NCBI GenBank assembly: GCA_965637545.1
Contig: OZ281498.1
Location: forward strand, 11,904,001-11,968,000
DNA length: 64,000 nucleotides
Reading direction: 5' to 3'
Source of the DNA: Phallusia mammillata
Taxonomy: Eukaryota
Shown here in pieces: positions 35,077 to 62,700 of the stretch (the first letter of the stretch is position 1; the number at the start of each line of letters is the position of its first letter). Under the pieces are notes generated by a model that made no database searches, had not been told where the DNA came from, and saw only the letters and a list, made by a program, of their open reading frames with translations. Both the position numbers and the translations under genes were made by a program.

Positions 35077-38000
35077 ATGAAATGCCAATACTTTTCAGCA
35101 GCTGTAATCTTGCTCCTTTTCGCCGGTCCAGTTTTTGCAAAAAACAACTTTACAGACTGTAGCCGATCCCATTTGGATTTAGTACTTCTTATTGATGGGA
35201 ACCTCAATCAAGATCCATCGAGCCTTGCAATTATAAGGAGCTTTCTGTCAAACATTGCGAGTTCCCTAAATACCAACAGTGAAAAGTCAAGAATGACTGT
35301 TTTCACGTAAGTTGTTCAATGTGACGTCACAATGTGTGTTAAGCTTTCCAAATCTTTCCGTGCGACTCAAAACGTTGACGATTTATTAAGCATTATGTTC
35401 TTTGAATCACTGTAGGTTCGACAAAAAAACGAAATTGGTGTTGGATTCTGCAGCTGAAATTGACTTCGAAAGCTTTTATGCCAAACTCCAGGCATTGGAA
35501 ATAACTGGAAAGGGAAGTATTCTTCTTAGAAGGGCTTTACGAAATGCAAAGCGGCACCTATTTAGTTCAAATGTTGGATTTCAGTGGCGGTAAGTTGTGC
35601 ATTAAGTGTGACACCATGTCTTGTTAGCGGTTTGGTGAAGTGCCCCCAGGGTAAACAAATGTGGAAACTTATGTAGATTATTCTGCAAACTGCTACTTGG
35701 CTACGGTGCGTCTAATTTGTTGTTCGGGGTCAATTAGTCACTCAAACACATACACTGCTTTCCATTAATATCTTTGCAAACCTTTGGGCAAGTGGGTTAA
35801 GGTGGAGATACTATCAGATATGTTAACACTTGCTTTATGAGTTTATGCTTCTTAAATTGATAAAAGTGCAATCAACATCCACCAAGTAGCTTTTAAATCT
35901 CTGTTTTCAGACGGGAACAAACAAGAGTTGTATTTGTGTTAATGAGCAAAAAGTCGAGAGATCCAGCTATTGAGATAGCCACCATACTTCGTCGCAACGG
36001 TGTAAAAATCGCTGCTATTGGCTTTGAAGAGGCCTCCGAGGTCCAGCTGCTTCCTTTGGCCTCGAAACCAACTAAAGTATGTTCAATATCGGATTATTTC
36101 AAGTTCTAAACACACTTGGTTATGACAGTACTTTACCTACATCATGCAAGTTTAATGACAAAATTACAGCTTCTCTCGCTGCGCGGTTACCATACGTTTC
36201 ACTTGCGGTCGCTGGCTATTGTATGTTCCACTTGTGCTAATACTTCGGTACTTTTCAGCATAACTTACTATTGCTGAATAATGTACATCAACTTCCCGGA
36301 AATGGATTAAATTTCTTTACTGCGATTATTTGTGAACAATATGGCCGGGAGACTTCGTCGCAAGGAGTGGATGTTAAAAAAACCAACACACCAGGGGGTA
36401 AGAAATTTGTTTAAAAATTTTAAACCGATAAATTCGATGTTTAAATATTGTCGCTGAAATCAAAATAAACAATGTCCTTAACAACATGCAATGTAGGCAA
36501 AGTTTTGCAGACAAATTAAATTTCCTACCTAGAACATTGATATCACAAACAAACAAAATGAAAGTAAATTATTCAAATTTATTTATGTTTTAGGTGATTC
36601 CCAAACACGGGCCTTTTTTAACATAACCAGAACCATCGTTACTTCAAATTCGATCGAAATCCACATTTCAACGGAAAATCTCCATCCACAACGATTTGAC
36701 ATCAGCATTGCACCAAATGACGCTTCATCGAAAGTCACACAAAGTGGTGGAGTTGTACTGATTTCTGGACTCGCCCCAGCAATGGAATACTACATAACCA
36801 TTGTGGCTGTGTTTTCAAAAACAATGAAGTTGTCGAATTCCTTTAAACTGGCTACACGTAGGTCAAACTAGAAACAACATTGGGTTAAATGTTTGCGACA
36901 ATCGCCGAAGCGTATAACTTTGGCAGCAATTCTCTGAGAGTGAAATCACAAGTTTGTCGTGTGCAAACGCACGAGTCATCAAACTGCCACAATCGATTAG
37001 CAAAGGTCAAGATAAATTTGTGACGTCTGCTTAAAAGGGCTTATTTTAGGCGTTTCAGCCCTAGGCAAAACATTTTGTAAAACCTATTTAAATTCGTGAA
37101 GTGTTTTGCTATTACAAAGCAATATCTGAATGCAGCATTCATTTAACAAAACTGTTTTAGATGAGCTTGTGACCCTCATATAACCCCATTCAGTTTTCTC
37201 AATCTAGTCCAAACGTTTTCCAATTTTCGGCAATGTTTTATATTTTCAGAAATGTCAAATAAACTTACCTACAATTTTATCTTTTTTAAAAATAAACTTT
37301 CTGTTTTAGGTCAACAAATGGTTGAGAACATTCGAACTAATATTATCACAACCCAACCTTGTCAGATGCAGGAAAATTTAATGGTAAAAACAAAGTGTCA
37401 AATATCGGTCGTGTTTTTTGTTGTTTGAAGCAGATAACGTTTTAATGTAATCTTCGTTGTTTAGTCAATGTATGGCGTAAATACCGACTTTGTCCTAAGC
37501 GATGCAGACTGTTTACCGGGAAATAAACACATCATGATCGAAGTTGAATGGCAAAGGACGGCCGTCAATGCACTGTACCAAGTAAGACACGTTTTATAGT
37601 TTTGAGTCAGTAAGGAAATTTACTATCTGTGATCATATAAGACTTATTTCGAGCTGCAGCTGCAATATAACTACTTAATAAGTCATAAATAAAAAGCTTA
37701 AAAGATTTTAATTATAGTTTTCCGTTTTATTAGTAATGTCTGAATCATAAAGCTTTTTGACAAAAATTCTACAGAATAGATCATTCTTAGATTAGTTAAC
37801 TAAAAACCAACAATGTATAGTTATAAGTCAGTTTCACCATTGCGTTCATGACGTTTAAAGTTACACAGCTGATTGCGACATGGTGACTGTTTCAGTGCAA
37901 TTATGTCGCAGTGTTGGAGAAACCAAAATAAAATCTTTTACCTCAAATACACACCAATTCAAAGTAGAAGCCAAATCATCACATATTAAATCACAAATTT

Positions 38001-41000
38001 CTTGGTTACTCAGAGATGTTTTGGAATAGAATGTTTCAAAAACAGCGCTTCGTTGTGAAACAGTTGGTTTTGGTTCTTAACATTTTTTGCCTAAACGCTT
38101 TGATACAGTTTAATTACAAATTTTGAAAAAATACAAATAGGTCTACACTTTGCCATATCTTCCACATCTTGTAAAAATGCCAAACACATCGAACAAGCGC
38201 GTGTTCACCAATGCTCAACCTGGAACAAAGTACACGATTTCCGTGAAGGCGATCTCCTCCAGCAACAACGTTTCATCCGAAGCTTCAACCGAAGTTGTAA
38301 TACGTAAGATAGTCCATACGACAAAATTACTATACTTTGTTCATATGATGACACGAACAAGCCAGCAGATTTGGGTAAAATACATTCGCATGCCGACAAT
38401 TTTTAACGTTTTTTTATTAAAATTGTAAAACAACAATTAGCTTTTTATTTAACATCGCAATTCATAAAGGCACAAAGGCGACAATTTGGCAACTATTTTT
38501 TGCATTATGAAATCAAAACTTATTTTACAGCTCCAAGTTCACCACAAAACGTTGATTTACGGCGTGTGAGTTCCACAGAAGTGGAGGTCGTTGTTCGTAC
38601 ATCGGGTTTGGCAAAATTTGGTACAATAGAATATGATGTTGTTTCCCCATACAAAAGATATACCGTCAGGTTAGTTTTTCTGACTAACTCGTCAGATTTT
38701 GCACAAAGTTATACTAACCTGAAGAAAAAACATTGCGCGAGTAGCAATATATGTCCTACATGCTGTTTTGAAGTATACAAAAGTATACACAAAAATGTGC
38801 ATTTTGTATGCCAACACTCTGTATTTATACCAATGGCAAATTAGTAAACAATCGACTTAATTTTAACGAGGATGCACGGTTTGTTATAATCCAGCGTCTA
38901 CATAAAGTTGGTGAAAAACAGGCTTTTTGTTGATGTTGTAATTGTGTTGCTATAGATTTTAAACAAGCAAGATTTCTTACAGACACAGCCCAAAAGGCGA
39001 GCAAGGTAACACCTCTGTCACCTCGATGTTTACAAATACACTTGACAACCTCACCCCATGTTTACCTCATCACGTAACAGTCCGTACTTCAAGTCATGGG
39101 GCGTTGAGTTTGCCAGTGACAGTTCGCCTGCAAAGATGCACTGAAGGTAACATGTCACAACATTTTTTGTGAGAAATTTGAACCAAATACATGTTTTGGC
39201 TTGTTTCAGGAACGCCGATTCACGAGTTCGATCAATCTGTCGTTATTTCCACTTCCAACGGTGTATATATCGTACCTTCAGGAAGAAGTGCCTTTCAACA
39301 GATCACGCCAAGGGTATAAAAATATTACACATTCAAAAATCGCCTTCGGCAATATTTTGTATTTTTCCACAAACTATAAACTTCATTTAAATTTTGTCAC
39401 TGTTTGTTTTGAGTTTCATCAACATTCCTGTTTGGAATTTAGTTACTCCTCTCCGTGCCCAGTGGTGTCGTAAACGTTCTGCTTCATCGCCGTAAAGTAA
39501 ACTTGAAGAAAACCCATGGACAAGGCAGCAATAACTATTGGACGTATTCTTTGATATGGATTGATCGCAAAACTCGCAACATCAAAACTACTTCCGTAAC
39601 TGATCCAACGAGGAAAAGTGCGACCATTGTATCCGGTAAATAAAAAAGACGTTACTTTGTTAAAAGACCAGCAGTGATTTTTGTGTTACAGCAAGCCTGA
39701 GCTTTGTCGTAAAAAATTGGTTATTTCTTCTTTTTCTAAATGATGTCTGGATTTACGTTTAAAAATATATGCAAGAGTTTTTTTACAAAACCTTGTGAGA
39801 TTAAATGTATATACTGAAATAAACAAAAGCGTACCTGTGTGAAGTATAATGTCTATAACTCCATGCAACTATAAAGTCGCTGCTATGTTTAAGTTTCCAA
39901 TACAAACTTAATCCTCCATTAGCGTAATTCGCGATAAGATCAACACATTAATCACGCCTATGTCGTAATCATACTGACTTATGAACTGCAGGACTACTAC
40001 AGCCCGTGGGCTTGGCGGTGGATGTATACGACAACAACGTTTATTGGAGCGACATGGCAAGCCGGAGTATTGGGGTGGCTCGCCTCTCTAGCGCCAGTGG
40101 TGAGGGGTATTCCACAGGGCTCAACAAACGTCTCATCACTACCGATCTCTACACTCCTGTAGGGCTATCTGTAGATTCAGTTGGAAGGTACGTGTGGAAC
40201 AATTGTATCCGCATATTTTGATATGAGATTCAAACGTTTGTAACATGGCAAAATATCGCTGATAAATTTGTTGTCATTAATACTTTTAAAGAAATCTGTT
40301 TTGGGCGGACATGTGGGGACGAATAGAAAGGAGTGAAATGGATGGAAGTAACAGAAAAGTTCTCATCAACGATCCGATCATCCGTCCACAATCGCTAGTG
40401 TTTTGTATGGCTTGTAATCGACTTTTGTGGATTGACTCACTTTCTGTAACAATTAACTCCATGAGGTAAGTCAAAAACGCATTTTTTTATTCGATTAGCG
40501 CACACAAAAACACGTTTTTATTCCTTGGGTTAGTCTTCAATTACCATTATATCTGGTCTTACTCTTTATTAATAAATGTCATTTTTACTCTCTGGTTTAG
40601 ATTTAACAATACTATATGATTTGATTTACTTTCTAGTGTAATCTTAAAAATACCATTCAAGACGTTTGTTGTGTAATCTAAAGTAAGATTTTACTACCGT
40701 GTTACGACTTTTTTTGCTTGTAGACCGGATGGAAGTGAAATAAGGAGCATGAACGAAACGAATTTGTCCCCATCCACTTTTGAACCCACTTTGCTGACAT
40801 CAATGGGAAAGCGTATCTTTGTGATGAACTCAATAGACAATACAATGTATGAATATGAAGAGAAATCAGATGGGACATTTGCACCAAACCTTTTGCCGTT
40901 AACCAACGTCGGGTCGCTTTCTGGTGTTACAGCGTTAACCTCTCAAGACCATGTGACTTACGAAGATGGTGGGTGCATGTTTCAACTATAACTATAGGTG

Positions 41001-44000
41001 TACGTAACACATTGCAAATAATTTGAAATTATACATGCACTTGTGTCTTGTCTGTAAAACAAAAACGAAAAGCTATTTTAGAATAAAATGTCATGTTGGT
41101 ATTTCATCCAAATTCAAATAATACTTTTTTATTTGCAGCTTTAATGGAAAGCAGTAAAGATATAAACTTTCCGTGCGCTGGCAAGAATCATAATTGCGAG
41201 GAAGTTTGTATTTCCAAAACTCTTTCTTATCCGATTTGTGCTGGCCAATGTTACCCCTGGGAAACTTTGTGTGTCAACAGGTTAGAAAAATATAAAATTG
41301 TATGCTTATTTTCTAGTGCATTATCTTATCTTAGGTCTATATAATTTAAGGATACTGAATACATAAAAAATCGAATACGTAAAATTTTTGAAATATTCTT
41401 ACCCAGTGTTTTTTTAAGGTGTTTTCAAATTTCTCCAGCGGTTTCCCGAAATTTGTACAAATAATTCGTTTACGCAAATATGGCTATTTTTTGGTATTTA
41501 AATAAAACACGTGCGGTCTCTTAAAACTACTTAGCGGTCACCCAAACCAAACCTTAAAAAAACCCTGTTCTTACCAATATGAGGCATGTTGTCTTCAGTC
41601 GTCATTAGAAATTCAATTTTGTTTCAGCACTCATTCATGCGTGAGCTCTGTTCTTGTATGCGACGGAACTAGGGACTGTCCAAACGGCGAAGATGAGCAT
41701 TTTTCAGTTTGTCCAACCAGTTTGCTGGAATGCGACGACTCGTCAATGTTTTTGTGCAAAAACAAAAAGCGATGTGTAGCCAACTCTTCACTATGCGATG
41801 GGCGGATGGACTGCAGAGACGGGTAGGAATAATTTATCTTGATATTTTTTGTCCGAGTATGCGCCCCTATCTGTTATATCTTGTGACTAAGAAAGTGTGC
41901 AAATAAAAAAAAATGTCTAATGATTTACTCAAATGAAACTATTTTTTACGTATATTTATTCAAGTCAATTCAAACCTGATAATGCGCTGATTAATATATT
42001 TAACAAATATGACATGACCTTCAGTTTTGACTGCCATACTACAGTAACTTGCACAGGAGAGTAATTATTTTGTTCTTTTTCGCACCTTCTTGTTCAAAAA
42101 GTTCGGACGAGGAAAATTGCCCTATTCAAAGCCAAACCTGCGACTTCGAAGACGACTTTTGTTTATGGAGCCAAGCTTCAAACGACGAATTTGATTGGAC
42201 GTTGTGGCACGGTCGAACGCCTTCGAGTAAAACCGGACCTATTCTCGACCACACGATGCTGCGTGTTAACAGTAAGTCGAAATGCAAAATGCTATCTCCA
42301 CTGAGGATTATATGTTTTACAATTGTCAAACAATGTGCACCGGTACACTCTGCTAAAAAAATCCCCATTTTAAGGTACGTATATTTACGCTGAAGCCACA
42401 CCACACGATGAAGGTGCTGAGGCAAGACTGATTTCTACATGGTTGCTGGGTCCAGTTTGCGTCAAGTAAGTGCAAGCTTTGAAAATTTTGTGTATGAAAT
42501 GTACAAAATGATTTGCTTTGCACTACAGCTTCAATTTTAATCCAGGTATTTTTTAAGTAAAACTAAAAATAGGAGGAATAACCTCCAAAGTTCGTTTAAA
42601 ACAACAGACTAAGATAAGAAACGTTTGTTTTAGGTTTTCATATCACATGTTCGGCGAAGGTGTGGGAAGTTTGTCGTTGTTTGTCCAACATCGCGACGAA
42701 CAGAATATGAAGGAAAAGTGGAGTGTCAGCGGCAATCAGGGAGTATTTTGGAAGACATCTTCTGTGTCAATCAGTGAACATGGTCTTTTTCAGGTACGCT
42801 TCGGTGCATATTATGACTCCTTCCTTCTTATCTATGTCAAGAGAAAATAATATTTTTTGCGGCAGGTTGTTTTCCAAGCGGTCCGAGGAAAAGACTTTCG
42901 CAGTGACATTGCCCTTGATGACGTCATGATTAGTGACGGTTTGTGCAAGGTCAGTTATCACTGCTTGTTTGACGGAGGCGAATGTGGTTATGAAAACAGT
43001 AAGTAAGCAATGTTCGATTATATTGATCATACCATAATCTTTGATATGTTTTGTAATATGCGCAGTCAATGATATGGATGGTGGATGGTCGATAAAGTCA
43101 GGATCGCTTCCTTTTGTGGATGAAGGATCTTCGGAGTTTTCTGCTCGAACGAACCAAAATTTACTCGACAAGGTAGCACTTGTTTACGCCAGCACCTTCT
43201 ATACTATAAACAAAAATCCCCAGTACTATACTCTAGTACACGGGTTCTTAACCAGGGGTGCGAGAACTGTTTCTAGCGGGGGCGGGGATGCATGTATAAA
43301 AATTAAATTACCATGGTTTTGTTATTTAAGCAATTACAGAAAGGAGTGCGAAAACTGGTTGGTAATCTAAAAGGGGTGCAGCAAGGAAAAAAAGAACCAC
43401 TGCTCTAGCATATGGTGTTTGACAAGATTAAGGAGTTTTGGTTTATAGACCAACTTTTAGTTTAAAGTGACAATAGCAATTGTGGAAACGTCTAGATCAT
43501 GATATATTCTCTAAAAGCAATATCTCTGGTAGTTATGATTTTGATCATGTAAACTTGTGCTAAAATCAGTAATTTTGGTGTATATTGCATTACCAAATAC
43601 TCACATGTGTTTACAGAATCCAGTTGAGGAACTCGGACCGGAGTGGTTTTATTTTCCTTTCAAGCATGACGACACTCCCGGATGTAGCGGATGTGATGGA
43701 ATCAAACTTGTGCGACAAATTTCATCTTTCGGTGCACCACAGTTTGCAGGCATCGTCCTCTGCAGTCCAACAAGGTCAGTTTTAATCCATTGATAAATCA
43801 GAAATTACAAAGGAATAGCCTCGTGTTTAAATAAAGATTTTCGATGACAAACCAAACCAACAATCTAGTTTTGCGGAAATAATCATGGACTGATCCGTGC
43901 ATTGAGAAATACTTTGTTAAAGATTTAATGTTACGTGCATTTTGACGATTTGTCGTCCAATTTTTGGACTAGTTTTATTTTAATGTTTTTTTATGATTGT

Positions 44001-53000: not shown

Positions 53001-56000
53001 CTGGTTCAGTTTCTTGAGGATCTCCCACATTTTGTCACTTGGGTCGAGGCCACTGAAAATTACTGCCAAGACCCAGCATGGAAGCCACCAGTGCCCAGCA
53101 CTACTTCATCCTTACCAGGTCCTTATTCTACATTTCTGAAAAGTTGCCTAATCGGTCTTACCTTAACATGAGGGGTGTGTCTTCTAGTGTTACACTAAAC
53201 CCTAACATTTCTTGTTGTTTTTTCAGGTAGTTTGCATGATGTTGGTTTGGGAAATTCAACACGTCCCCGAAAACAACTTTTCATCTGCACAGGTAAAAAC
53301 TTATCCTACTTGACTGTGTGTTTCTGAGGGATGAGTCGAACCAAGTATTTACATATGCAAACATTGCTTAAGCATGTGTCAGGCCAAATTTCGGCTCTAC
53401 CACGCGAGCTGTGTTTTCCGTTATGTTATAAATGTGCAACGTGCAAATATTCAACACTTACTTTGGTTTATTGCCGGCAGACACAAGCCAATCTGGTCTG
53501 ACACTCAGACTGAAGTTACTTGGAACATCCACCGGACACGGATTCTCAATCAAATTTCACACGCTTACTGACCTCAATATGTCCCCATACAACCATCAAG
53601 AATATGATGTTCAGCATATTGGAGAAACACGATTCCGTATGTTCATGATTATTTCGCCTCTGTATCTGAATTAATAGACATACTAATGCTTAGGTCGCAC
53701 GATCCGCTCTATCCAATCTGCCGTAGGTTTATCTTTCGGTCATCCGACTAATACTCCGCCTTCAATTTTTGTGGCACGACCAACGACTACAAATCCAGGT
53801 AGTTAATTCTACACAATTTTACTTCATGTATCATATCGCCAAATGTGTTAAAGTTAAAAAAATGTATACTATAAATTGTAGACCTTTATTTGACCCAAAC
53901 AAGCCCAGGGGAAACCCCGTCCCCCTCAGTCGCGCCCCTACTTCGTATCGACCTCACTGCTAATGTGACGTGCGCTGGAACATCGTGGAAATCCGGAGAT
54001 CATTGGTTTATTACGTCACCGAACTTTCCAAAGGATTATGATCAGAATTCAAACTGCATGTGGAAATTCGAAACAGAACCAGGATATCAGGTTGGTTTAC
54101 AGTTAGGTGATAGGAAGTTTTTAACACTATCTCATAGTTTTAATGGATTTGTTAAATCCAATCAAAATTGAAAATTTTAAAAATAAATTTATTTTTTTGT
54201 TGCACATGACTCTTGCGTATGTTACAAGATAAATCCTTGTGAAGTTTAATTAAAGAATACATTTATTTTGAAAAAAGTGATTAAATAAAATTTAAAATAA
54301 GCTTAATAAAACTAAATGTTTAAATTTAGGCTGTTTCCACTAAATTAAGCGTTTACTTGCTGAAGTAGCAAAATACTGGTAGTAACTTTATCTTACCCTT
54401 TTACTTTGCTGTAGATTCTGCTGAAATTTTCCAAAATGTTTGTTGAGGGAGACGTGTCTTGTGGTTACGACAGTGTTTCGTTGTATGATGGACCCGATAT
54501 AAGTTCACCGAGAATTGGGAAATTTTGTGACAGCAGAAACAGTTTTATCCGTCCACAGTTGTCCGCTGGCCCTGAGATGTTTATCCACTTCCGCTCCGAC
54601 CATTATGTCCACATGCAAGGTTCTTTTTACACATGTTTCTGCTTGTGATAAGTAGTCATAATTATAACATAATTATTTGCCAGCACCCACCTCTGTGAGC
54701 GCTTGCACTTAGTAACTAAAGTGAAACAAATTTTGTCAGAAACTATACTAACACTTTTTTGTTGATAACAAAAGATATTAATACCTACAGCTGTAATTTA
54801 CCTGAAACTTTTATTTATTTAAAGGTTTTAAGGCGTCTCTGTCAACCCGCAAAACACCGAAACGAGAAAACAAAATAAGTAACCAGACTGTTCTTTACTC
54901 ATGCCACTTTGATGACGACATGTGTGGGTTTGATGACGAACTTGTGTCGTCAGACTTTACTTGGACGCGGAACCGGCTTTCTACGTCTTCTGAAGATACT
55001 GGACCTCCGTACGACGATTCTCCTATGAGAAACGGTCAGTCGATGATACATTAATGTTGTGACAATAAACCGGCGTAGAAATGTGGATGTTAGAAGCAAA
55101 ATGCTGTAATTATTAAACATTTCTGTAAATACTTACAACATCCATGCATTATCAGCACAAGAAACTTTGTAGTAAAGGTTTAAACCTGCATGTCGCTACA
55201 ATTGGCTAGGCAGTGGGTGGGCAACTTTTTTTTATTCCTTGTGTCAATTTACTTGCAATGTCAAAATGCTTTGCGTGCCTACATTGTTATGTATATAAGT
55301 CATTTGTGACTTTAGATTTGTGGGGTGATTAGAAATCAGACACATTTATATGTGTTCACCTTGTCTTAGGACTACGTCACTCTAAACAAACCTTGTAATT
55401 GTAATAGTCTAATCGTAAAAAAACATGAACTTCTAAATAATTTGGCGTAAGTAATCAGCTCGCGTGTCAGCCTTGGTTGCCTACAGTTTTTGTTTTGGGC
55501 TAGTGTGTTTATCACAAGAATTCCCATCAGAGGTTTTTGATTGTATTTTTTGTTCAATATCGAAAACCTTCCATGATTTTTGCAAATCTGCTGATTTTGA
55601 TCTCAGTCTCACCATTTTATTTTAAGTTGGAAAAGGGAAGTTATGCCTTACAATAGTTTAACAGAAAGTCGCTCATATAGCATTTACTCCATTCTCTTCG
55701 ACTCAATGTTATGTGTTATTTACTTACGTGACTCGGATGAACACAGGTTGGTACGCTTACATCGAAGCCTCGTCTCCTCAACACAAGGGCGATCGGGCCC
55801 GCATTGTCAGCCCGCTTATTAGAGGAACTCCCAACGAGGCACGCTGTCTTCGTTTTTCCTACGACATGTATGGTGGAGCCCATGGTTTTCTCAACGTCTT
55901 TGCTGTCGTGGGCCTTCGCAGGAATCACACGCAAGTCTCGCTGGAGGAAGATGGAACAGAGTCAGTGTCTTCCACCGAACCTCTCGTGTATTTGTTTGGG

Positions 56001-58740
56001 TCGGGAGTCCATGCTGAGAAAGCGGATGAGAGTAACACCAGTGTAACGTGAGTTTCATTATGCTAGCATCGCGTAGTAGAATTTTTTTTTACGGTTTATT
56101 AACTGTATTCTGCAGTAACGTTGTAAATATACCCGTGTAAGTGGTGACTGACACGATGACCACAAGGTCTTTCGGTAATGGTTTCACGTTTTTTAGTTTA
56201 AGAATCCATTTTAACAGTGGCTTGCTACAATTATGAAAATGCTGTAGTAAATATTATTCACTGAATATTATTTGATTCACCAGGTTCCAACGCTTTTTGT
56301 TATGGAGCAGATCAGATCAGCAGCGTAGATTTGACGAAAAACCTTGGATGCAAGCTTCCGTTACATTTTATCCATCCAGCGATTTTCAGGTATTAATTGA
56401 AACATCAACACTTTTGCATCTTTGCATCCTATCCGAGCTTTGCAATTTAAATTTTTAATCCAACGTTTTAGATCATGTTCGAGGGAGTTCGCGGACGAAC
56501 TTACGAGTCAGATACAGCGATTGATAACATGGAGGTTTTAGAGGGAAAATGTCAGGATGAATGTAAAGAGGATGGTCAGCTTCAGTGTCTCACCAACAGT
56601 GGACTAATAAGCACAGGTAAGCGGCCCTATAACATGACTCATGTGTAAAGGGATTTCGCAAGAGTTTTTTTTTACTTCCTAATTCTGTTAAAGCCAATTA
56701 CCCCGAGCAATAGGGCGTGTTATTGGCCTAAACTGCTATGTCCTATTTATTTAAACAACATTAAAAATGCCTCGTACATATACTAACGTCAATGATATAC
56801 AATTATAATTGATTAGTGTGCATGGTTTCTTTAAATCCAAAAACAAATCGTTCCCTCTTTTATTATACCAGAGAAAAAGTAGAGAAAGCGTTCAACACAT
56901 TTAGCTTGATAACTTGGGTTTAGACCTAAACATGTAAATGTGGTGTTGGATTAATTTCTTCCGATTTAACATGGTATAGTTCAAATCAAATATTGACTGA
57001 CACAATATAATGTGTAGTGGTAAATCTGGAGTTTCTTTATGTTTTGCCTTATTAATCCGACAACGTTATTTTAGGCGAATGTGTCCCAATCATGTTGGAG
57101 TGCAACGGTGTGAAGGATTGTGCAAGCGGATCTGACGAACTATATTGCATCACTACTTTACGCCAGATGTGCGCGGCAGGTAAAAGAAATTTGTAGATCA
57201 AATCAATACCTCCAATATATTATGTTGTTGTTCTCCTTTAATACCAAATTATTTTATCAAAATGTCTACGCCGCGCAACGAACATTTGAAATCATAGTCG
57301 ACACCAACATCTTGTACGGTTACATGGTTAAACATGTACAATTCATTTCAATTGTGCAGAGACGATCCAACCCAATACGACACTTGCACTTGTTTGTGAC
57401 GAAAAACACGTTGATCAATGTGGTTTGTCATCATCTTCCGTAACCCGGATTGATCAAATTATTTGTGATGGAAAAATTGATTGTTTTGGTGGATACGACG
57501 AAGCTCTGTGCCCAGAAAAACAGACAAACGCAGAATCAGAGACTGTTATTAATGCTCTTCATGGTGATTGTGGAATTCAAGATGCCGAGGGAGATGAAGT
57601 GTCAGCATACCCGGTATTGAAACCTTTATCAAATTTCGCCAATAAGATTCTCGTTTATAAGCTGTCCTATTTTTACTTAGATAAGGCTCAACCCCTTTTT
57701 TAAATTTGCAACCACTGTCCTATGTAGATATTGGTATTATTAGTTTATAAACTTGTGAAATTAGTTTAACCCCGTTTTCAATTTCAATGCTCTATTTGTT
57801 CAAATTTTTAACTGACGATACTTTATCAGAACGTGCCGAATTCGGAACTGTGGCGATGGGTTGTCGGTTTGTACGTTGCCAAACCAAGTCTGGTTAAATC
57901 GAATGGACACACAACGAGCACTGGTGTTTCGTCTTCGGCCTATACTTTCTTGTGTAGTGCTGTTTTTATCCAAGATAATTGGGCGGTTATCCCAGCTCAC
58001 TGCATTTTAAACCCTGATCTGTACGACAACTACGCAAGAAGCTTGTTGGAGGCCGATAAAACCGGACCAGATGGAGAACTGTTAGCAGGTAAGTTAGAAA
58101 AGGCAATCCGCAACACACGAAACGCGACTAACGATATTTCTCTCAGAGTTCGATGACCCAGACCTGGATGCCGAAGTCCCTGCAACTTTCTCGTACATTC
58201 TCATCAGAAATCGAAATCCAAATGTGGAAACAACAGCTAAACGGGTCACGTGGAGGGTCACAAACTGGTTTATTCATCCCGACTATGTAGTTCGCCCTAA
58301 CAGCAGCACTTCAAGAAAAGATCGGAGATCTTCGTCGACGTATTTTGATCGTTTCAAGACACTGACCGAAGACAGTGATTCAGCCAATAGTGACGTCGCT
58401 CTGCTGAAAGTCGAGCTCGATGACGAAGTGTTGTCCCAAGTTGACGTCAGCCCCAACACCGGTGACGTAGTTGAGGAAGAAGAAATGTTCTATGTGACAT
58501 ATGACGTCAGCATGAATGTCACCGATGAAGCACCACCGTCGTCAGCATGTTTAGAGTTAAAAAAGAAGAAAAAAAGAAAGCGAGGGTCTTCCAGTGGGTC
58601 AAGTGCGTTTCCTTTACCTGTGGAACTTGAGCGACATCCAATTTCTTCTTCGGAACCAGAAAGCACAAAACCGCGAAAGGCGACCTGTATTGCAATAGGT
58701 CATTCCCCAGTCACCAGGTATAAATACTTGCATGTTTCCG

Positions 58741-58796
<56 letters not shown>

Positions 58797-61700
58797 CACG
58801 GGGTGCGAACCCAGGAACCTCCCGGGGACGAATCCCGATCAGGTTTTTTATGTCTGTATATGGGTCAGGCGCGCCAGGCCATTCGGCCAAGTTCCTGCCC
58901 ATGTTTCCGCCTCTTGCTTTATCCTCATGGCATTTTTTTTCTTTCAAACTCTAGCGGATTGGAGGAAAACCACTTAGTTTGGAGCTTACGCCAATCCAAG
59001 ATTTCTGTGACATCGTCAGAGATCAGTACTCCACATCTATTCTGTGACACTTATCAACTTCCTGAAATGCGAAGGCTTTGCCTCGAGACGATTACATACG
59101 ACCAAGGTAAGATTTGTCACAAGTTGAAGAACACTATTTAATCCAATGCTAAATCACAGTTTGAGGTCGTTTTGCGCTAAAAAATGTAAGGACGACTTGA
59201 AGCCATGTGAGGACTCTCATATTGCAACGGTTTTGTTTGCCCAAGCAGCAAACATTCACACATATATGCTATGTCGTGAAACAGACTAAGTTATTTGACG
59301 AGGTAACATTGACCATTTTACAAAAGACTTTAGGTTTGGTCGAGCTTTCCAACACCATATTGAGTTGCCAAACGCCAAGCTTGAATAAGAGATAGTTGGT
59401 ATCAAATGCTCGACTTACTCTGGCATTTCCTTTTCCAAAACTACTTTATTATTGTAATACATGCTGCAGCAAGTCAACGAAATTATTTTCATTCATAGAA
59501 TCACCTTCTGGCATCGGCTCAATGAGACTCAATACCACAATCCGGGCTGGACATAAATCTGTTCGAACATCCGCTTTTCTGGTAAGTTACATTCCAACGC
59601 AAGGTCATATTTATCGTTTTCCACTGACACCAAGCTTTTTTTCTAGAACGATCCGGGACTTTCCCTATTTTGCAAGCGACACGACAACCGATGGTTTTTA
59701 ACTGGACTCTACAGTTGGATAAACTTCAGAAGAAACTTTATGATGCCTAATTACACGTCTATACTGAACAACATGCATAGTAAGAATAGTTTGTTGGACC
59801 TCATTTAAGCATGCGGGTAGCTTGTGATCTTTCCTGGCCACTTTTGCTAAGTACCTAGCAGTTGCAATCTGCTTTCTGTCACAAAACGTTCATACGAGTT
59901 TTTAAGTAAAGTGGCACTTATGACACCTTAAGACCAATACCATGACCTTCTTTAGGTGAAAGTTAGCAAACTTACTGGGAGTATCTTTACACAGTCCTTT
60001 TGCATGCCAACTTTGTTTAATACTAACACCGCAATTTCGCGTCCCTCTTCTCTCCAAAGCTTTGCCTTGCTTCCGATTTTCACTAATCCGTCTTTATCTT
60101 GTGAAGACAGTGGCTTACTGTCTATTAATTCTCCAGTCTGGCCGAATGACGATCCGACTCTGGGCGTTCCGATGGGCACAGACTACTTTCTACAAGTCAC
60201 CCAAAGACATAACGAATGGATCGACAAGTTACTGACCGACGGTAAGCAACAAGAAGTATAACGCAATTGCGGCACTGTGAATGACAAAAAACACGAACCG
60301 ATGACTACATGTGGGTCTCCAATGTTGTATTCTGCAATTATTTTTTTTCTGTCAATTTCTGTGGGTCTTACAACAAAAAAGGGGTCCAGTAAAACAATCA
60401 CAGTACGCCAGGCCCATTGAAGGCGCCATACCGAATCAGCCGGTCACCAAGCATTCACCACTATATGGCAAGGCGTAGGTTAGAAAAATCTAGCCTGCGG
60501 TGGGATTCGAACCCACGACAGGAGTCTTTCCAGTAAAACAAAAATTAATTAAAGCGACCCATGCACTGAAACTATTTTTTTTATCTCGTCCAGTCTTACT
60601 GTTTGCCTGAGCAATATGGACAACTCTGTGAAATAAATAAAACAAAAGTAATCTGGTTTGAGGAGGCAGTTGCCTTGGCAACGGCTTGTTTTGTTTAATT
60701 TTGCGGAGTAAGGCGTTGTTTTGTCAAACGATAGAGCTTTATTGTTATTTAAAGAAGTCACACATCACATCAAGTTGCAAATAATTGTCTTTGATTTTTT
60801 TTAGTGCATTTTGTGCCTGCAAATTGTACCGCGAACAATAATGTTGTTTGTTCCGCAGCATAAAAAAAATACTGCAATATATAAAGGTTGGGAAACATTA
60901 TATTATATATTACTTTACTTTTCTTATTTTTACATTTATCAATTGTATTGCTTTCCATCAGCCTGTCCCGGTCAGTTTTCCTGTTATCCTGTCGAATCAT
61001 TGCATCCGGTCAAATGTATTCCTCATAAATCAATATGTGATGGAAAAGTGGATTGTCCAATGAACAACGCCGATGAAAACAACTGCACTTCTGGTTGTTC
61101 TTACAATCCCACACACGATTCCATCCACCGCTACTATTCTCGCCTTTCTTCATCTGGTGTCGTGCTACCCGAAGGGGCAGGTCTTGTGGATTTGGAAGAT
61201 TATGACGATGCCACGCGTTCCTGGAGAAATGAATCGGTATTTGGTGTTCAAAGGATTCGATTTAATTTGGTCGACTCTCCAGGGCCACCTAGCTGCCGAT
61301 GGGTGATACAACCACCACCTGTGAGTGTTTCCAAAATGTTACCATTATGCTAAAAAATGCTGTTGTAGCTTTGTGCAATTAAACTTAACTAATTACTACA
61401 GGTTATTCTTGTGCATTTTTTGTCGAATGAAATATATACAAGGTATTTTCGATCCTAAATTAAATAGGTTTACCGACACTGTTTCAAACTTGTCACGGAT
61501 TTGATTTCTGTTTTTTTACACTTCTTATAAAACCAAAGTACTTCGATTGCAGGGCAAAATAGCCGTGTTAAGAATTCCAAAGATGAGCGTCAGTCCTGTA
61601 TTAGGGGGTGGCAACATTCAAATCATAAATCAGGAAAAAAGGTTTATTCACGACTACAAAACGGAATCGGCATCTTACTTGTCGTCGCCTGGGAAACCAA

Positions 61701-62700
61701 TTGCTTTTTCACTAACGCCACCTCCCGGTATAAAACAATTGACTGCATTAAGGTAATCTTTTTAAAAGTCATAAAGTATGTTTTTCGGCAATGGATGGAA
61801 AATAAGTTTTGAGTTCGATTTGTAGATCGCGCTATTTTGATTATTTCCTTGATGAAGTTGGAATGTGCACTGGAATGCACAAATGTTCTAATGGAAAATG
61901 CGTGTCGTTACACAAGGTATGCGATGGGGAACTTGACTGTGCTGATATGAGTGATGAACAGGAATGTTCATCTGGTAAGTCTTGGCTAGTCTATAAATAC
62001 TAAACGGTTTTCCTATTCACCTAAAAAAACATGTCTTCGTCATATAAAAATCTTTTTGGTAAAATAATTTAGTTCTCATCATGCGATAATTTAAAAAAAC
62101 ACATTTACTATCGTGCTTCCAACTTGATGTAATATACGGTTGTTGTGCATTTTCATTACATTATCTAACGGTTCCACAGGATGCGGCGGTCCCAGTCTCT
62201 TGGCAAACACGATTCGTGGTTCCATTATGAGCAGAAATTACCCACTACCTCACTATGGATCCGGTGATTGCATGTGGATGATTGTTGGGCAACAGCAGCA
62301 AACTGACACCACAACCGAGGGATCAACTGAATATTCCTTATCTATTGAATTCAGCGAATTCAAAACCTCGCACGACAATGACGTTTTGTACGTATATGAC
62401 GGCGTTGGAAAAGATAGAACTTTGCAAGGTAAATCTTGTTGTAGTTGTTGTTTTTAATTTTACTCAATTTACGTTTTTTTGACTATGTGTTCTGTGCATT
62501 CGAATCTGCTGCTTATTATGTGTAAAGTAAGTCATTATCTATCATCCCCTTTTGCAGACACATATTACGGAGAGCGTGGAGTGTTTAACATCAATGTTCA
62601 AAATGATCGAGCCACGATAATACTTCGCAGCAATGACGACATCGCCATGAGACGAATCAATGCCACATTCTACCTAAACGCAATGGACTCGTCCGTTTAA
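35077..62700 (+). CDS. Giant secreted mosaic serine protease (about 72 exons, about 4,100-4,200 aa) with one active and one inactive trypsin-fold domain
   Basis: ATG 35077 starts a signal peptide ([21 protein letters not shown]). I traced a phase-consistent GT-AG exon chain to TAA at 62698-62700, with a few boundaries approximate (for example near 47901, 57613 and 59963). Domain order from motifs: VWA, about 3 FN3, YWTD repeats, EGF-like, 2 LDLa, MAM, MAM with an insert, degenerate MAM, LDLa, CUB, LDLa, SRCR, protease (IVGG 48422; TAAHC; DIA; GDSGGP), CUB, unknown module, split CUB, CUB, MAM, 2 LDLa, protease homolog, LDLa, CUB, LDLa, CUB. No transmembrane segment was seen. Confidence 0.85.
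35170..36330 (+). other. VWA domain of the mosaic protein (exons 1-4)
   Basis: DLVLLIDG..., [31 protein letters not shown] show the typical VWA strand/helix pattern. The MIDAS DxSxS reads DGNLN. Confidence 0.8.
36594..39146 (+). other. About three FN3 domains of the mosaic protein
   Basis: [19 protein letters not shown]; [19 protein letters not shown]; [10 protein letters not shown]...[17 protein letters not shown]. Confidence 0.75.
39441..42120 (+). other. YWTD (LDLR class B) beta-propeller, EGF-like module and two LDLa repeats
   Basis: [16 protein letters not shown]...VYWSD, PVGLSVD...[25 protein letters not shown]; [12 protein letters not shown]; [13 protein letters not shown] and [16 protein letters not shown]. 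Confidence 0.85.
41404..41567. mobile_element. hAT-type MITE, family A, copy 2 (164 bp)
   Basis: Same TIRs as 13623-13759; perfect TSD TTCTTACC. Confidence 0.92.
43239..43402. mobile_element. hAT/Charlie-type MITE
   Basis: Termini CACGGGTTTCTTAACC / AAAGAACCACTG; TSD CTCTAGTA vs CTCTAGCA (7/8), close to the NTCTAGAN preference of Charlie elements. Confidence 0.75.
44343..44506. mobile_element. hAT-type MITE, family A, copy 3, inserted at a 3' splice site
   Basis: Same TIRs and body as the other family A copies; TSD TTTGGGCC (44335-44342) vs TTTAGGCC (44507-44514); the right copy contains the AG acceptor of the exon starting at 44512. Confidence 0.9.
48422..50405 (+). other. Serine protease domain 1 (S1 family), catalytic triad intact
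   Basis: QCG...PMLK/IVGG activation site, WPWIASL, LCGGTLI, TAAHC (His codon 48674), WDIAILVL (Asp 49145), [11 protein letters not shown]|GDSGGPLVC (Ser 50261), [17 protein letters not shown]. Confidence 0.95.
57560..60241 (+). other. Serine protease homolog domain 2, predicted catalytically dead
   Basis: DCG with no IVGG; [26 protein letters not shown] (His 57998), [15 protein letters not shown] (Asp 58392), SACL. The GDSGGP equivalent reads NDPGLSLFC (Pro at 59653), followed by WFLTGLYSW and [13 protein letters not shown]. Confidence 0.85.
58747..58899 (-). mobile_element. Young tRNA-derived retroposon (SINE or tRNA retrocopy) with a poly(A) tail
   Basis: Perfect 16-bp TSD CATGTTTCCGCCTCTT (58731-58746 and 58900-58915); about 50 T on the + strand; 103-bp head on the minus strand with A-box TGGCCGAATGG and a B-box-like GGTTCGCACCC. 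Confidence 0.9.
60400..60525 (-). mobile_element. Truncated tRNA-related repeat (SINE-like fragment)
   Basis: The minus strand reads GTGGGTTCGAATCCCACCGCAGGC (T-arm with B-box and an acceptor 3' strand) followed by a GC-richer body. There is no matching 5' half of a tRNA. Confidence 0.5.

What the first reader, a model, noticed from the sequence alone, without database searches (positions are those of the whole stretch)
35077..62700. A ~4,150-aa secreted protease platform with about 30 modules and an active/dead protease pair
One phase-consistent reading frame joins matrix-binding modules (VWA, FN3), an LDL-receptor-type YWTD-EGF unit, four MAMs, about six CUBs, about eight LDLa repeats, an SRCR, an intact protease in the middle and a dead protease homolog near the C-terminus. 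There is a signal peptide and no TM segment. I know no described protein with this architecture. Partial parallels are the enteropeptidase/matriptase stem (CUB-LDLa-SRCR-protease), Drosophila Nudel (LDLa repeats with an active and then an inactive protease domain) and the multi-protease CUB polyproteins ovochymase and polyserase. It could be a self-scaffolding extracellular cascade for egg coat, tunic/matrix remodelling or innate immunity (inference).
Basis: partly seen in the sequence, partly recalled or inferred. Interest (0 to 1): 0.85.

Follow-up and report, generated by a model that had tools for sequence, protein, structure and literature searches.

The report
Giant secreted sea-squirt mosaic protease gene
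This is very likely one real gene of about 71 exons encoding a 4,100-residue secreted protein that strings some 30 binding modules around one working and one permanently disabled protease domain, a layout kept in a distant sea-squirt relative but matching no described protein, and its function is still unknown.

Summary
My model on the + strand runs from ATG 35077 to TAA 62698-62700. It has 71 GT-AG exons and encodes 4,092 aa, with a signal peptide and no membrane segment.

Exon-wise Pfam scans and motifs give this order: VWA, 3 FN3, YWTD propeller-EGF, 2 LDLa, 3 MAM (the second interrupted by a TARSH_C-like insert), LDLa, CUB, LDLa, SRCR-like, active S1 protease, 3 CUB plus about 320 unassigned residues, MAM, 2 LDLa, dead protease, LDLa-CUB-LDLa-CUB.

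- **One gene:** a 78-kb contig of a distant relative (28-60% identity) is collinear exon by exon, from its own signal peptide-VWA exon to the last CUB. Conserved splice sites are phase-compatible at about 35 of 37 junctions. This includes the suspected break after the active protease.
- **Active protease:** it has K|IVGG, His, Asp and Ser, with an unusual Gly189/Asp226 pocket.
- **Dead protease:** it keeps His and Asp, but lost Ser195 in both species, and Gly193 and the activation site at least here.

No transcript evidence could be obtained, and nine exons (about 370 aa) are unsupported. No long annotated homologue and no matching paper turned up. I rate it a new variant of the mosaic serine proteases; function is inferred only. 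The scan had not noted it on other DNA.

The parts
35077..35139 (+). Start codon and signal peptide (aa 1-21)
   Evidence: This is the only stretch with Kyte-Doolittle mean above 1.8. The ortholog's first exon also starts with M plus a hydrophobic leader.
35077..36397 (+). VWA domain without a MIDAS motif. Exons 35077-35306, 35416-35589, 35911-36076, 36259-36397.
   Evidence: Pfam VWA E 2.5e-5 on the third exon. Exon 1 matches the ortholog at E 0.007 and ends in the same phase. Exons 2 and 4 rest on motif and model only.
36594..39146 (+). Three FN3 domains. Exons 36594-36857; 37310-37383 (uncertain linker), 37465-37581, 38141-38303; 38531-38669, 38983-39146.
   Evidence: Pfam fn3 E 6.5e-4 and 1.4e-4. 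Ortholog matches: 38141-38308 at E 4e-6, plus weak collinear hits for the third FN3.
39210..41280 (+). YWTD beta-propeller and EGF-like module. Exons 39210-39313, 39443-39635, 39992-40187, 40292-40465, 40724-40968, 41139-41280.
   Evidence: Pfam Ldl_recept_b above cut-off on two exons. The exons are collinear with the ortholog and share splice sites with it.
41628..42130 (+). LDLa 1 and 2. Exon 41628-41822 and the start of 42102-42271.
   Evidence: Pfam Ldl_recept_a E 3.8e-11, two stretches. The regex also finds both.
42130..42960 (+). MAM 1. Exons 42102-42271, 42375-42465, 42634-42793, 42866-42998.
   Evidence: Pfam MAM E 1e-6, 4.7e-14 and 2.3e-4 on three pieces. Splice sites are conserved with the ortholog.
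42960..45290 (+). MAM 2, interrupted by a TARSH_C-like insert. Exons: end of 42866-42998, 43066-43172, 43617-43774, 44010-44149, 44512-44836, 44977-45111, 45188-45345.
   Evidence: Pfam TARSH_C E 2.4e-4 and 1.4e-12, and a MAM C-terminal hit at E 7.8e-5. The TARSH-like exons are 58-60% identical to the ortholog.
45290..46260 (+). MAM 3 (divergent). Exons: end of 45188-45345, 45468-45666, 45809-45984, start of 46190-46355.
   Evidence: No Pfam hit. Assigned from MAM motifs and ortholog matches at E 2e-11 and 4e-11.
46260..47562 (+). LDLa 3, CUB 1 and LDLa 4. Exons 46190-46355, 46765-46951, 47109-47254, 47382-47562.
   Evidence: Pfam LDLa E 3.4e-6 and 3.8e-7. CUB 1 rests on motifs and ortholog matches; it was part of the training set of the HMM, so that score is not independent.
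47710..48418 (+). SRCR-like module and pro-segment, including the Cys at 48371-48373. Exons 47710-47902 and the start of 48315-48478.
   Evidence: Pfam SRCR E 7.4e-4 and SRCR_2 E 3.4e-3, both below cut-off. Conserved in the ortholog.
48419..50414 (+). Active S1 protease (SP1). Lys|Ile cleavage site 48419-48424; His 48674-76; Asp 49145-47; Gly189 50015-17; Ser 50261-63; Asp226 50357-59. Exons 48315-48478, 48611-48789, 49111-49238, 49842-50026, 50255-50414.
   Evidence: Pfam Trypsin at 48.1, 19.3, 42.9 and 51.5 bits against a 20.6 cut-off. Residues mapped. All are conserved in the ortholog. PDB hits are generic S1A proteases.
50523..51260 (+). CUB 2, joined to SP1 by a 108-nt phase-1 intron. Exons 50523-50637, 50721-50875, 51144-51260.
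   Evidence: Pfam CUB E 5.6e-7. Donor, acceptor and phase are conserved with the ortholog.
51335..51880 (+). Unassigned segment A (about 118 aa). Exons 51335-51459, 51540-51633, 51746-51880.
   Evidence: No Pfam hit. Only the third exon has a weak ortholog match and a conserved donor. The first two exons are model-only.
52019..52632 (+). Ser/Thr/Pro linker and CUB 3. Exons 52019-52348, 52467-52632.
   Evidence: Pfam CUB weak, E 0.033, and a weak ortholog match at E 0.023. It was part of the training set of the HMM, so that score is not independent. The second exon is model-only.
52699..53798 (+). Unassigned segment B (about 195 aa). Exons 52699-52812, 52976-53118, 53227-53292, 53481-53636, 53694-53798.
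   Evidence: No Pfam hit, no local CUB-HMM hit and no ortholog hit. This is the least secure part of the model.
53882..54619 (+). CUB 4. Exons 53882-54090, 54415-54619.
   Evidence: Pfam CUB E 8.2e-8 and 1.4e-8.
54825..56560 (+). MAM 4. Exons 54825-55034, 55747-56047, 56284-56389, 56472-56616.
   Evidence: Pfam MAM E 1.4e-3 and 7.8e-10. Ortholog E values reach 3.6e-27, with conserved splice sites.
56560..57613 (+). LDLa 5 and 6. Exons: end of 56472-56616, 57075-57179, 57360-57613.
   Evidence: Pfam LDLa E 4e-8. LDLa 6 is assigned from the motif [16 protein letters not shown] and an ortholog match at E 1e-17.
57830..60241 (+). Dead S1 protease homologue (SP2). His 57998-58000; Asp 58392-94; Asn-Asp-Pro at 59647-59655 replaces Gly-Asp-Ser; no Ile-Val-Gly-Gly start. 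Exons 57830-58088, 58147-58717, 58955-59106, 59499-59581, 59647-59779, 60137-60241.
   Evidence: Pfam Trypsin E 0.0086. Aligned to SP1. The ortholog reads IDRGV at the Ser motif. The exon 58147-58717 is found in nine other assemblies with the Asp invariant.
60962..62700 (+). C-terminal LDLa 7, CUB 5, LDLa 8 and CUB 6, then the stop codon. Exons 60962-61320, 61553-61752, 61826-61974, 62180-62428, 62558-62700.
   Evidence: Pfam LDLa E 1.1e-3 and 1.1e-10, and CUB E 4.5e-6. Ortholog E values reach 1.5e-22, with conserved splice sites. The last exon is model-only.

Best explanation
A single protein-coding gene of a tunicate (sea-squirt-like) genome: 71 exons, 27.6 kb, about 4,092 aa. It encodes a secreted, soluble mosaic serine-protease zymogen.

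Shown by the sequence:
- An N-terminal signal peptide and no membrane anchor.
- A front half of matrix- and ligand-binding modules: VWA, FN3 x3, YWTD-EGF, LDLa, MAM x3.
- A central cassette, MAM-LDLa-CUB-LDLa-SRCR-protease.
- A protease (SP1) with a complete catalytic triad, a GDSGGP oxyanion region, a Lys|Ile-Val-Gly-Gly activation site and the usual cysteines.
- A roughly 1,900-residue tail of CUB, MAM and LDLa modules that holds a second protease fold (SP2). SP2 has lost Ser195 in both species compared; Gly193 and the activation cleavage site are gone in this genome, and the ortholog shows no Arg/Lys-Ile-Val-Gly-Gly site either, although its exact exon boundary was not resolved.

Inferred:
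- The protein is secreted and docks to extracellular partners through its many modules.
- A trypsin-like enzyme, or the protein itself, cuts after Lys1937. The two chains stay linked by a disulfide between Cys1921 and Cys2048.
- The Gly189/Asp226 pocket gives basic or broadened specificity.
- The dead domain serves as a non-catalytic binding or regulatory module carried on the same chain.
- The biological process is unknown.
For: - Gene model: no stops, all introns GT-AG.
- Ortholog: collinear from the signal peptide-VWA exon to the last CUB.
- Splice sites were chosen by cross-species conservation alone, yet about 35 of 37 adjacent exon pairs are phase-compatible.
- The SP1-to-CUB junction is conserved to the base, and in the ortholog the CUB exon cannot start an ORF.
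- No signal-peptide-like ATG start lies between 50414 and 55573.
- Pfam domain hits.
- Catalytic residues and their conservation.
- The dead-protease exon is intact in nine other assemblies, with an invariant Asp and a shared exon end.
Against: - No transcript or protein evidence was reachable.
- Nine exons (about 370 aa, mostly 51335-51633 and 52467-53798) have no Pfam or ortholog support, so continuity there rests on my splice model and on the absence of an alternative secretory start.
- The SRCR and SP2 Pfam scores are below curated cut-offs.
- The ortholog's intron after SP1 is 3.5 kb, long enough for an intergenic region.
- Tunicates use trans-splicing and operons (from my own knowledge), so adjacency alone does not prove one mRNA.
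- All functional steps are inference.
Confidence: 0.75

Rival explanations
1. Two or more adjacent co-oriented genes, possibly an operon resolved by trans-splicing. For example, a VWA-to-SP1 protease gene followed by a separate CUB/MAM/LDLa/pseudoprotease gene. The break would lie after SP1 or within 51260-53882.
For: Most mosaic S1 proteases end with the protease domain. Without splicing, the frame stops 8 codons after 50414. The ortholog's gap after SP1 is 3.5 kb. The stretch 51335-53798 is poorly supported.
Against: The phase-1 donor and acceptor at 50414/50523 are conserved to the base. The residues across the junction (N-LTLP versus N-LTVP) are conserved, while upstream of the acceptor is not. 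In the ortholog, stops precede the CUB exon and it has no ATG. No signal-peptide-like start lies between 50414 and 55573, although all downstream modules are extracellular types. Phases chain correctly throughout.
Confidence: 0.1
2. One locus, but the full 12.3-kb mRNA is rare. The main products are shorter isoforms. Examples would be retention of the intron after 50414, giving a protein that ends just after SP1, or skipping of the symmetric unsupported exons.
For: A stop lies 8 codons into the intron after SP1. Two other introns are in frame and stop-free (48479-48610 and 58718-58954). Exons 53481-53636 and 53694-53798 are phase-symmetric, and my first model left them out.
Against: The C-terminal half is conserved exon by exon with intact frames in a distant species, so it is translated. 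It has no start of its own.
Confidence: 0.12
3. A decaying or non-functional locus, that is, a pseudogene or an artefact of stringing together unrelated domain-like ORFs.
For: Several modules are very divergent: MAM 3, CUB 1, SP2 and the unassigned segments have no Pfam hit or only weak ones.
Against: The 71 exons contain no frameshift or stop. 50 exons (75% of the CDS) have ortholog matches in the same order and strand. Catalytic residues and an unusual S1 pocket are kept in both species.
Confidence: 0.03

Closest known systems
Enteropeptidase (TMPRSS15) and other type II transmembrane serine proteases
   Same: The central cassette MAM-LDLa-CUB-LDLa-SRCR-protease follows the order of the enteropeptidase stem (MAM-CUB-LDLa-SRCR-protease, from my own knowledge). 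It also has a Lys/Arg|IVGG zymogen site and a pro-segment Cys that can tether the cleaved chains. A partial Ciona cDNA has been called a putative enteropeptidase homologue (PMC7914634).
   Different: There is a signal peptide instead of an N-terminal membrane anchor, and no SEA domain was found. About 1,600 extra N-terminal residues (VWA, FN3, YWTD, two MAMs) are present. The protease is internal and is followed by about 1,900 residues. The S1 pocket is Gly189/Asp226, not Asp189.
Drosophila Nudel
   Different: Nudel has no VWA, FN3, YWTD, MAM, CUB or SRCR modules. Homology beyond the shared domain types was not tested. The resemblance is most likely convergent domain shuffling.
HrOvochymase, ovochymases and polyserases
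   Same: These are secreted ascidian or vertebrate polyproteases in which CUB domains separate protease domains and the last protease domain lacks the catalytic triad (PMC9265791).
   Different: Ovochymase has only protease and CUB modules and two active domains. The protein here has one active domain, eight other module types, and a dead domain that keeps His and Asp.
MAM/LDLa array proteins (MALRD1, MAMDC4) and LDL-receptor relatives
   Same: They share alternating MAM and LDLa modules, and a YWTD propeller followed by EGF next to LDLa repeats (from my own knowledge).
   Different: Those proteins are membrane-anchored receptors without protease domains. The protein here has no transmembrane segment and no cytoplasmic tail.

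Membership tests
Peptidase S1A (chymotrypsin family), active enzyme: SP1 | Pfam Trypsin profile match above the curated cut-off | tested here: met
   Three exons score 48.1, 42.9 and 51.5 bits against a 20.6 cut-off.
Peptidase S1A (chymotrypsin family), active enzyme: SP1 | His57, Asp102 and Ser195 triad, GDSGGP oxyanion region, and a zymogen cleavage site before IVGG | tested here: met
   TAAHC, WDIAIL, GDSGGP and LK|IVGG are present. All are conserved in the ortholog, which has R|IVGG.
Peptidase S1A (chymotrypsin family), active enzyme: SP1 | Measured catalytic activity | not testable with these tools
   Needs a recombinant enzyme assay.
S1A pseudoprotease (non-catalytic protease homologue): SP2 | Chymotrypsin-fold homology | tested here: inconclusive
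   Pfam Trypsin gives 16.3 bits, below the 20.6 cut-off. The alignment to SP1 recovers WxWxxxL, AHC, HPxY, DxALL, the GDSGG position and the WI-helix blocks, but with large inserts. No structure model was possible because the domain spans six exons.
S1A pseudoprotease (non-catalytic protease homologue): SP2 | Loss of at least one catalytic residue | tested here: met
   Ser195 is Pro here and Arg in the ortholog. Gly193 is Asn here and Ile in the ortholog. There is no IVGG activation site.
Enteropeptidase / type II transmembrane serine protease | N-terminal signal-anchor transmembrane segment | tested here: not met
   The only hydrophobic stretch is a short N-terminal signal-peptide-like leader (cleavage not tested). 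No other 19-residue window exceeds a hydropathy mean of 1.65.
Enteropeptidase / type II transmembrane serine protease | Stem order ...MAM-CUB-LDLa-SRCR-protease | tested here: met
   MAM3-LDLa3-CUB1-LDLa4-SRCR-SP1, with one extra LDLa. The SRCR call is weak.
Enteropeptidase / type II transmembrane serine protease | Asp189 trypsin-type S1 pocket, and orthology of the catalytic domain | tested here: not met
   The pocket is Gly189/Asp226. PDB phmmer ranks acrosin, TMPRSS6, plasmin, hepsin and tryptase with no preference for enteropeptidase. No phylogeny was possible.
Ovochymase / polyserase polyproteases | Several protease domains in one chain, separated only by CUB domains or short linkers | tested here: not met
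   The two protease domains are about 1,120 residues apart, with CUB, MAM and LDLa modules between them.
LDL-receptor family | YWTD propeller-EGF plus LDLa repeats, together with a transmembrane segment and cytoplasmic tail | tested here: not met
   The extracellular modules are present, but there is no transmembrane segment or tail.

The most novel reading that the evidence does not exclude
A tunicate-wide giant zymogen in which the permanently dead protease domain acts as a built-in cofactor or regulator of the active one on the same chain. It would work like the separate serine-protease homologues that assist clip proteases in arthropod cascades. One secreted polypeptide would then carry matrix anchor, enzyme and cofactor together. 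It may descend from the enteropeptidase lineage after losing its membrane anchor.
Probability: 0.15. Interest if true: 0.7.

Novelty: new variant of a known kind. Interest (0 to 1): 0.5.

Why it matters
If one mRNA really encodes all of this, it is among the largest and most module-rich serine proteases seen. The protease sits mid-chain rather than at the C-terminus. An anciently inactivated second protease has stayed under constraint in at least ten assemblies. That makes it a natural system for asking what dead protease domains do when tethered to a live one, and how an enteropeptidase-like stem was re-used in the closest invertebrate relatives of vertebrates. It is also a practical warning for annotation: the only database traces found were single-exon ORF fragments, so automated pipelines may miss or split this gene. 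All the domain types are familiar, and giant shuffled mosaics are common in invertebrate deuterostomes, so the surprise is moderate.

Tried and rejected
- **De novo splice/codon dynamic programming alone.** It gave 61 exons and 3,704 aa, missed real exons and chose wrong sites around SP1/CUB2.
- **Dynamic programming with conservation bonuses.** It over-extended exons and added tiny filler exons (79 exons, 4,525 aa). I replaced both models with manual curation on conserved splice sites.
- **Representative search with the dead-protease exon.** It found no long or named homologue.
- **The search for homologous proteins.** The FN3-1 exon found nothing. The 347-aa read-through ORF found only one known fragment, so no spliced transcript-derived ORFs turned up.
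- **One contig walk step.** It landed on a repeat ORF in another contig (L006) and was discarded.
- **A second ortholog contig (L002).** It covers only MAM4-SP2c, and its Ser-motif exon lies beyond the fetched range.
- **ESM Atlas look-up of the LDLa7-CUB5 exon.** It returned only generic CUB/LDLa clusters.
- **Local CUB HMM and self-BLAST.** Neither assigned the two unknown segments.
- **Signal-peptide-like ORF at 60301 inside the largest intron.** I rejected it as an alternative start, because the ortholog's intron there is only 120 nt.

Full report
**What is there**

The window is AT-rich (about 38% G+C), and the + strand of 35077-62700 is a dense series of short stop-free segments with domain-like translations.

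I scanned about 60 of these segments against Pfam. In order, the hits were:
- VWA
- fn3 (two hits)
- Ldl_recept_b (two hits, above cut-off)
- Ldl_recept_a (seven places)
- MAM (three domains in pieces)
- TARSH_C (E 1.4e-12) inside the second MAM
- SRCR (weak)
- Trypsin (four consecutive pieces, 19-51 bits)
- CUB (four places, one weak)
- a weak Trypsin hit (E 0.0086) at 57812-58153

**Gene model**

A purely statistical splice and codon model was too crude, so I anchored the model on comparative data.

A search of 1.84 billion cluster representatives with the long exon 58149-58715 returned only nine short, unnamed ORF fragments of 165-313 aa at 29-54% identity. These are the same exon in other assemblies.

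Several of them lie on long ENA contigs. I walked one contig (ERZ25067582 ctg11551_29x_l) in overlapping 20-kb loci and merged 81.8 kb without a mismatch.

tblastn of the window's stop-free segments against it gives a single collinear, co-oriented chain at 28-60% amino-acid identity:
- It runs from window 39446 to 62433 at E down to 7e-30.
- Upstream it continues with FN3-2b (E 4e-6), weaker collinear FN3-3 and propeller hits, and the first VWA exon (E 0.007).
- That first exon begins with Met plus a hydrophobic leader in the relative too, and ends in the same phase.
- Control: all 52 HSPs from + strand segments hit the relative's + strand, and the only 10 from the reverse strand are the antisense of the same exons.

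For each conserved exon I picked acceptor and donor by the joint score in both species, without using phase. About 35 of 37 adjacent pairs turned out phase-compatible, where roughly one in three would be expected by chance.

The curated model has 71 exons, all GT-AG, with introns of 57-720 nt (median 175). The CDS is 12,279 nt and the protein 4,092 aa. Fifty exons (75% of the CDS) have ortholog matches.

Nine exons (about 370 aa) are supported only by my model: 37310-37383, 51335-51459, 51540-51633, 52467-52632 and five between 52699 and 53798. The true length may therefore be 3,700-4,100 aa.

**One gene or several**

The exon actually ends at 50414 (...YAGM + A|GTAGGT, phase 1), and the next starts at 50523 (cag|AT TTG ACG..., the start of a CUB).

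In the relative the same junction reads ...HTGL + A|GTGAGT and ctgcag|AT CTG ACA. The phase is the same, and the spliced residues N-L-T-(L/V)-P are conserved. Upstream of the acceptor the sequence is unrelated, contains stops and has no ATG. That exon is therefore internal in both species, although the relative's intron is 3.5 kb.

Elsewhere, a scan for Met followed by a hydrophobic run finds the true start at 35077 and no candidate between 50414 and 55573. The few candidates elsewhere lie in introns or terminate at once. All downstream modules are extracellular types that need a signal peptide.

I therefore put about 0.75-0.8 on a single transcription unit. No cDNA evidence could be reached. 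Operons and trans-splicing in tunicates, which I cite from my own knowledge, keep a two-gene reading alive at about 0.1.

**The two protease domains**

SP1 (aa 1938-2173) has the following features:
- an LK|IVGG activation site
- TAAHC (His57), WDIAIL (Asp102) and GDSGGP (Ser195)
- the cysteines expected for the 42-58, 136-201, 168-182 and 191-220 bridges
- Cys122 (SPACLP), together with a pro-segment Cys (YQCGV), so cleaved chains would stay linked

Its S1 pocket is Gly189/Asp226 rather than Asp189/Gly226. The relative has the same pair and an R|IVGG site. PDB sequence searches of two SP1 exons give generic S1A neighbours such as acrosin, TMPRSS6, plasmin, hepsin and tryptase.

SP2 (aa about 3298-3726, six exons) aligns to SP1 through these blocks, with inserts totalling about 200 residues:
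- WRWVVGLY
- [19 protein letters not shown]
- WFIHPDY
- SDVALLKVE
- CIAIGHS
- IRAGH
- NDPGLSLFC
- WFLTGLYSW
- EWIDKLL

SP2 keeps His57 and Asp102. Ser195 is Pro and Gly193 is Asn, and there is no basic-IVGG site. The relative reads IDRGVALFC at the same place, so the serine was lost before the two lineages split.

An alignment of the long SP2 exon from ten assemblies has 12 invariant columns, including the Asp102 equivalent and two cysteines. Every fragment stops 2-6 codons after GHSPV, which marks a conserved exon end. The dead domain is therefore old and under constraint.

**How it probably works**

Shown by the sequence: a secretory leader with no anchor, a zymogen-type active protease with an intact active site placed mid-chain, and a non-activatable, Ser-less second protease fold.

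Inferred:
- The protein is exported and held on extracellular partners by its VWA (which lacks a MIDAS motif), FN3, MAM, CUB and Ca-binding LDLa modules.
- A Lys/Arg-specific enzyme, or the protein itself, cuts after Lys1937.
- The heavy chain and the protease-plus-tail chain remain disulfide-linked.
- The dead domain provides a binding or regulatory surface.

Tissue, substrate and process are unknown.

**Comparison with known proteins**

- The central cassette mirrors the enteropeptidase stem. The membrane anchor, the SEA domain and Asp189 are absent, so membership fails even though the resemblance in design is strong.
- Nudel shares the idea of LDLa repeats around an active and an inactive protease.
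- Ascidian HrOvochymase is a secreted CUB-linked polyprotease whose last domain lacks the triad (PMC9265791), so the active/dead pairing is not new in this animal group.
- A review mentions a partial Ciona cDNA as a putative enteropeptidase homologue (PMC7914634). I could not test whether it is related to this gene.
- Four literature searches found no description of this architecture.

**Verdict**

It is a new variant of the mosaic S1A serine proteases, conserved among divergent tunicates, and of moderate interest (0.5).

Earlier notes of this scan on the same window (the TARSH_C-like insert in MAM and the upstream Raf-type kinase) agree with what I saw. The scan had not reported this gene on other DNA.

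Noticed in passing
window 48479-48610 and 58718-58954: Two introns of the gene are in frame and free of stops (132 nt inside SP1, and 237 nt inside SP2 with a T run of about 55 nt). Retaining them would insert 44 or 79 residues without breaking the frame. The ortholog's ORF also reads through at the first position.
   Followed up: partly
window 50015-50017 and 50357-50359: The active protease has Gly at position 189 and Asp at 226, the reverse of the trypsin arrangement. The same pair is present in the ortholog.
   Followed up: partly
window 43617-43774 and 44010-44149: The TARSH_C-like exons nested in the second MAM domain are among the best conserved of the whole gene, at 58-60% identity to the ortholog.
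   Followed up: partly
window 35176-35200: The VWA domain lacks the DxSxS metal-site motif. It reads DGNLN here and INTNS in the ortholog.
   Followed up: no
window 60301-60417: An ORF with a signal-peptide-like start ([23 protein letters not shown]) lies inside the largest intron (720 nt). The ortholog's intron there is only 120 nt, so this is probably chance.
   Followed up: partly
L003/L004 (ortholog contig), opposite strand inside introns: The orthologous locus is about three times longer (78 kb against 27.6 kb). It carries hAT-type transposase ORFs (Dimer_Tnp_hAT, DUF4371) inside its introns. One ortholog donor appears to be GC rather than GT, at the end of the YWTD4 exon.
   Followed up: no
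window 3926-5923 (- strand): An uninterrupted 666-aa ORF lies in a locally G+C-richer patch (0.48 against about 0.38). It has no Pfam match.
   Followed up: partly
window 28860-29303 (+) and 8519-8947 (-): The upstream neighbours include a protein-kinase exon, consistent with the earlier Raf note, and a C2H2 zinc-finger ORF.
   Followed up: partly
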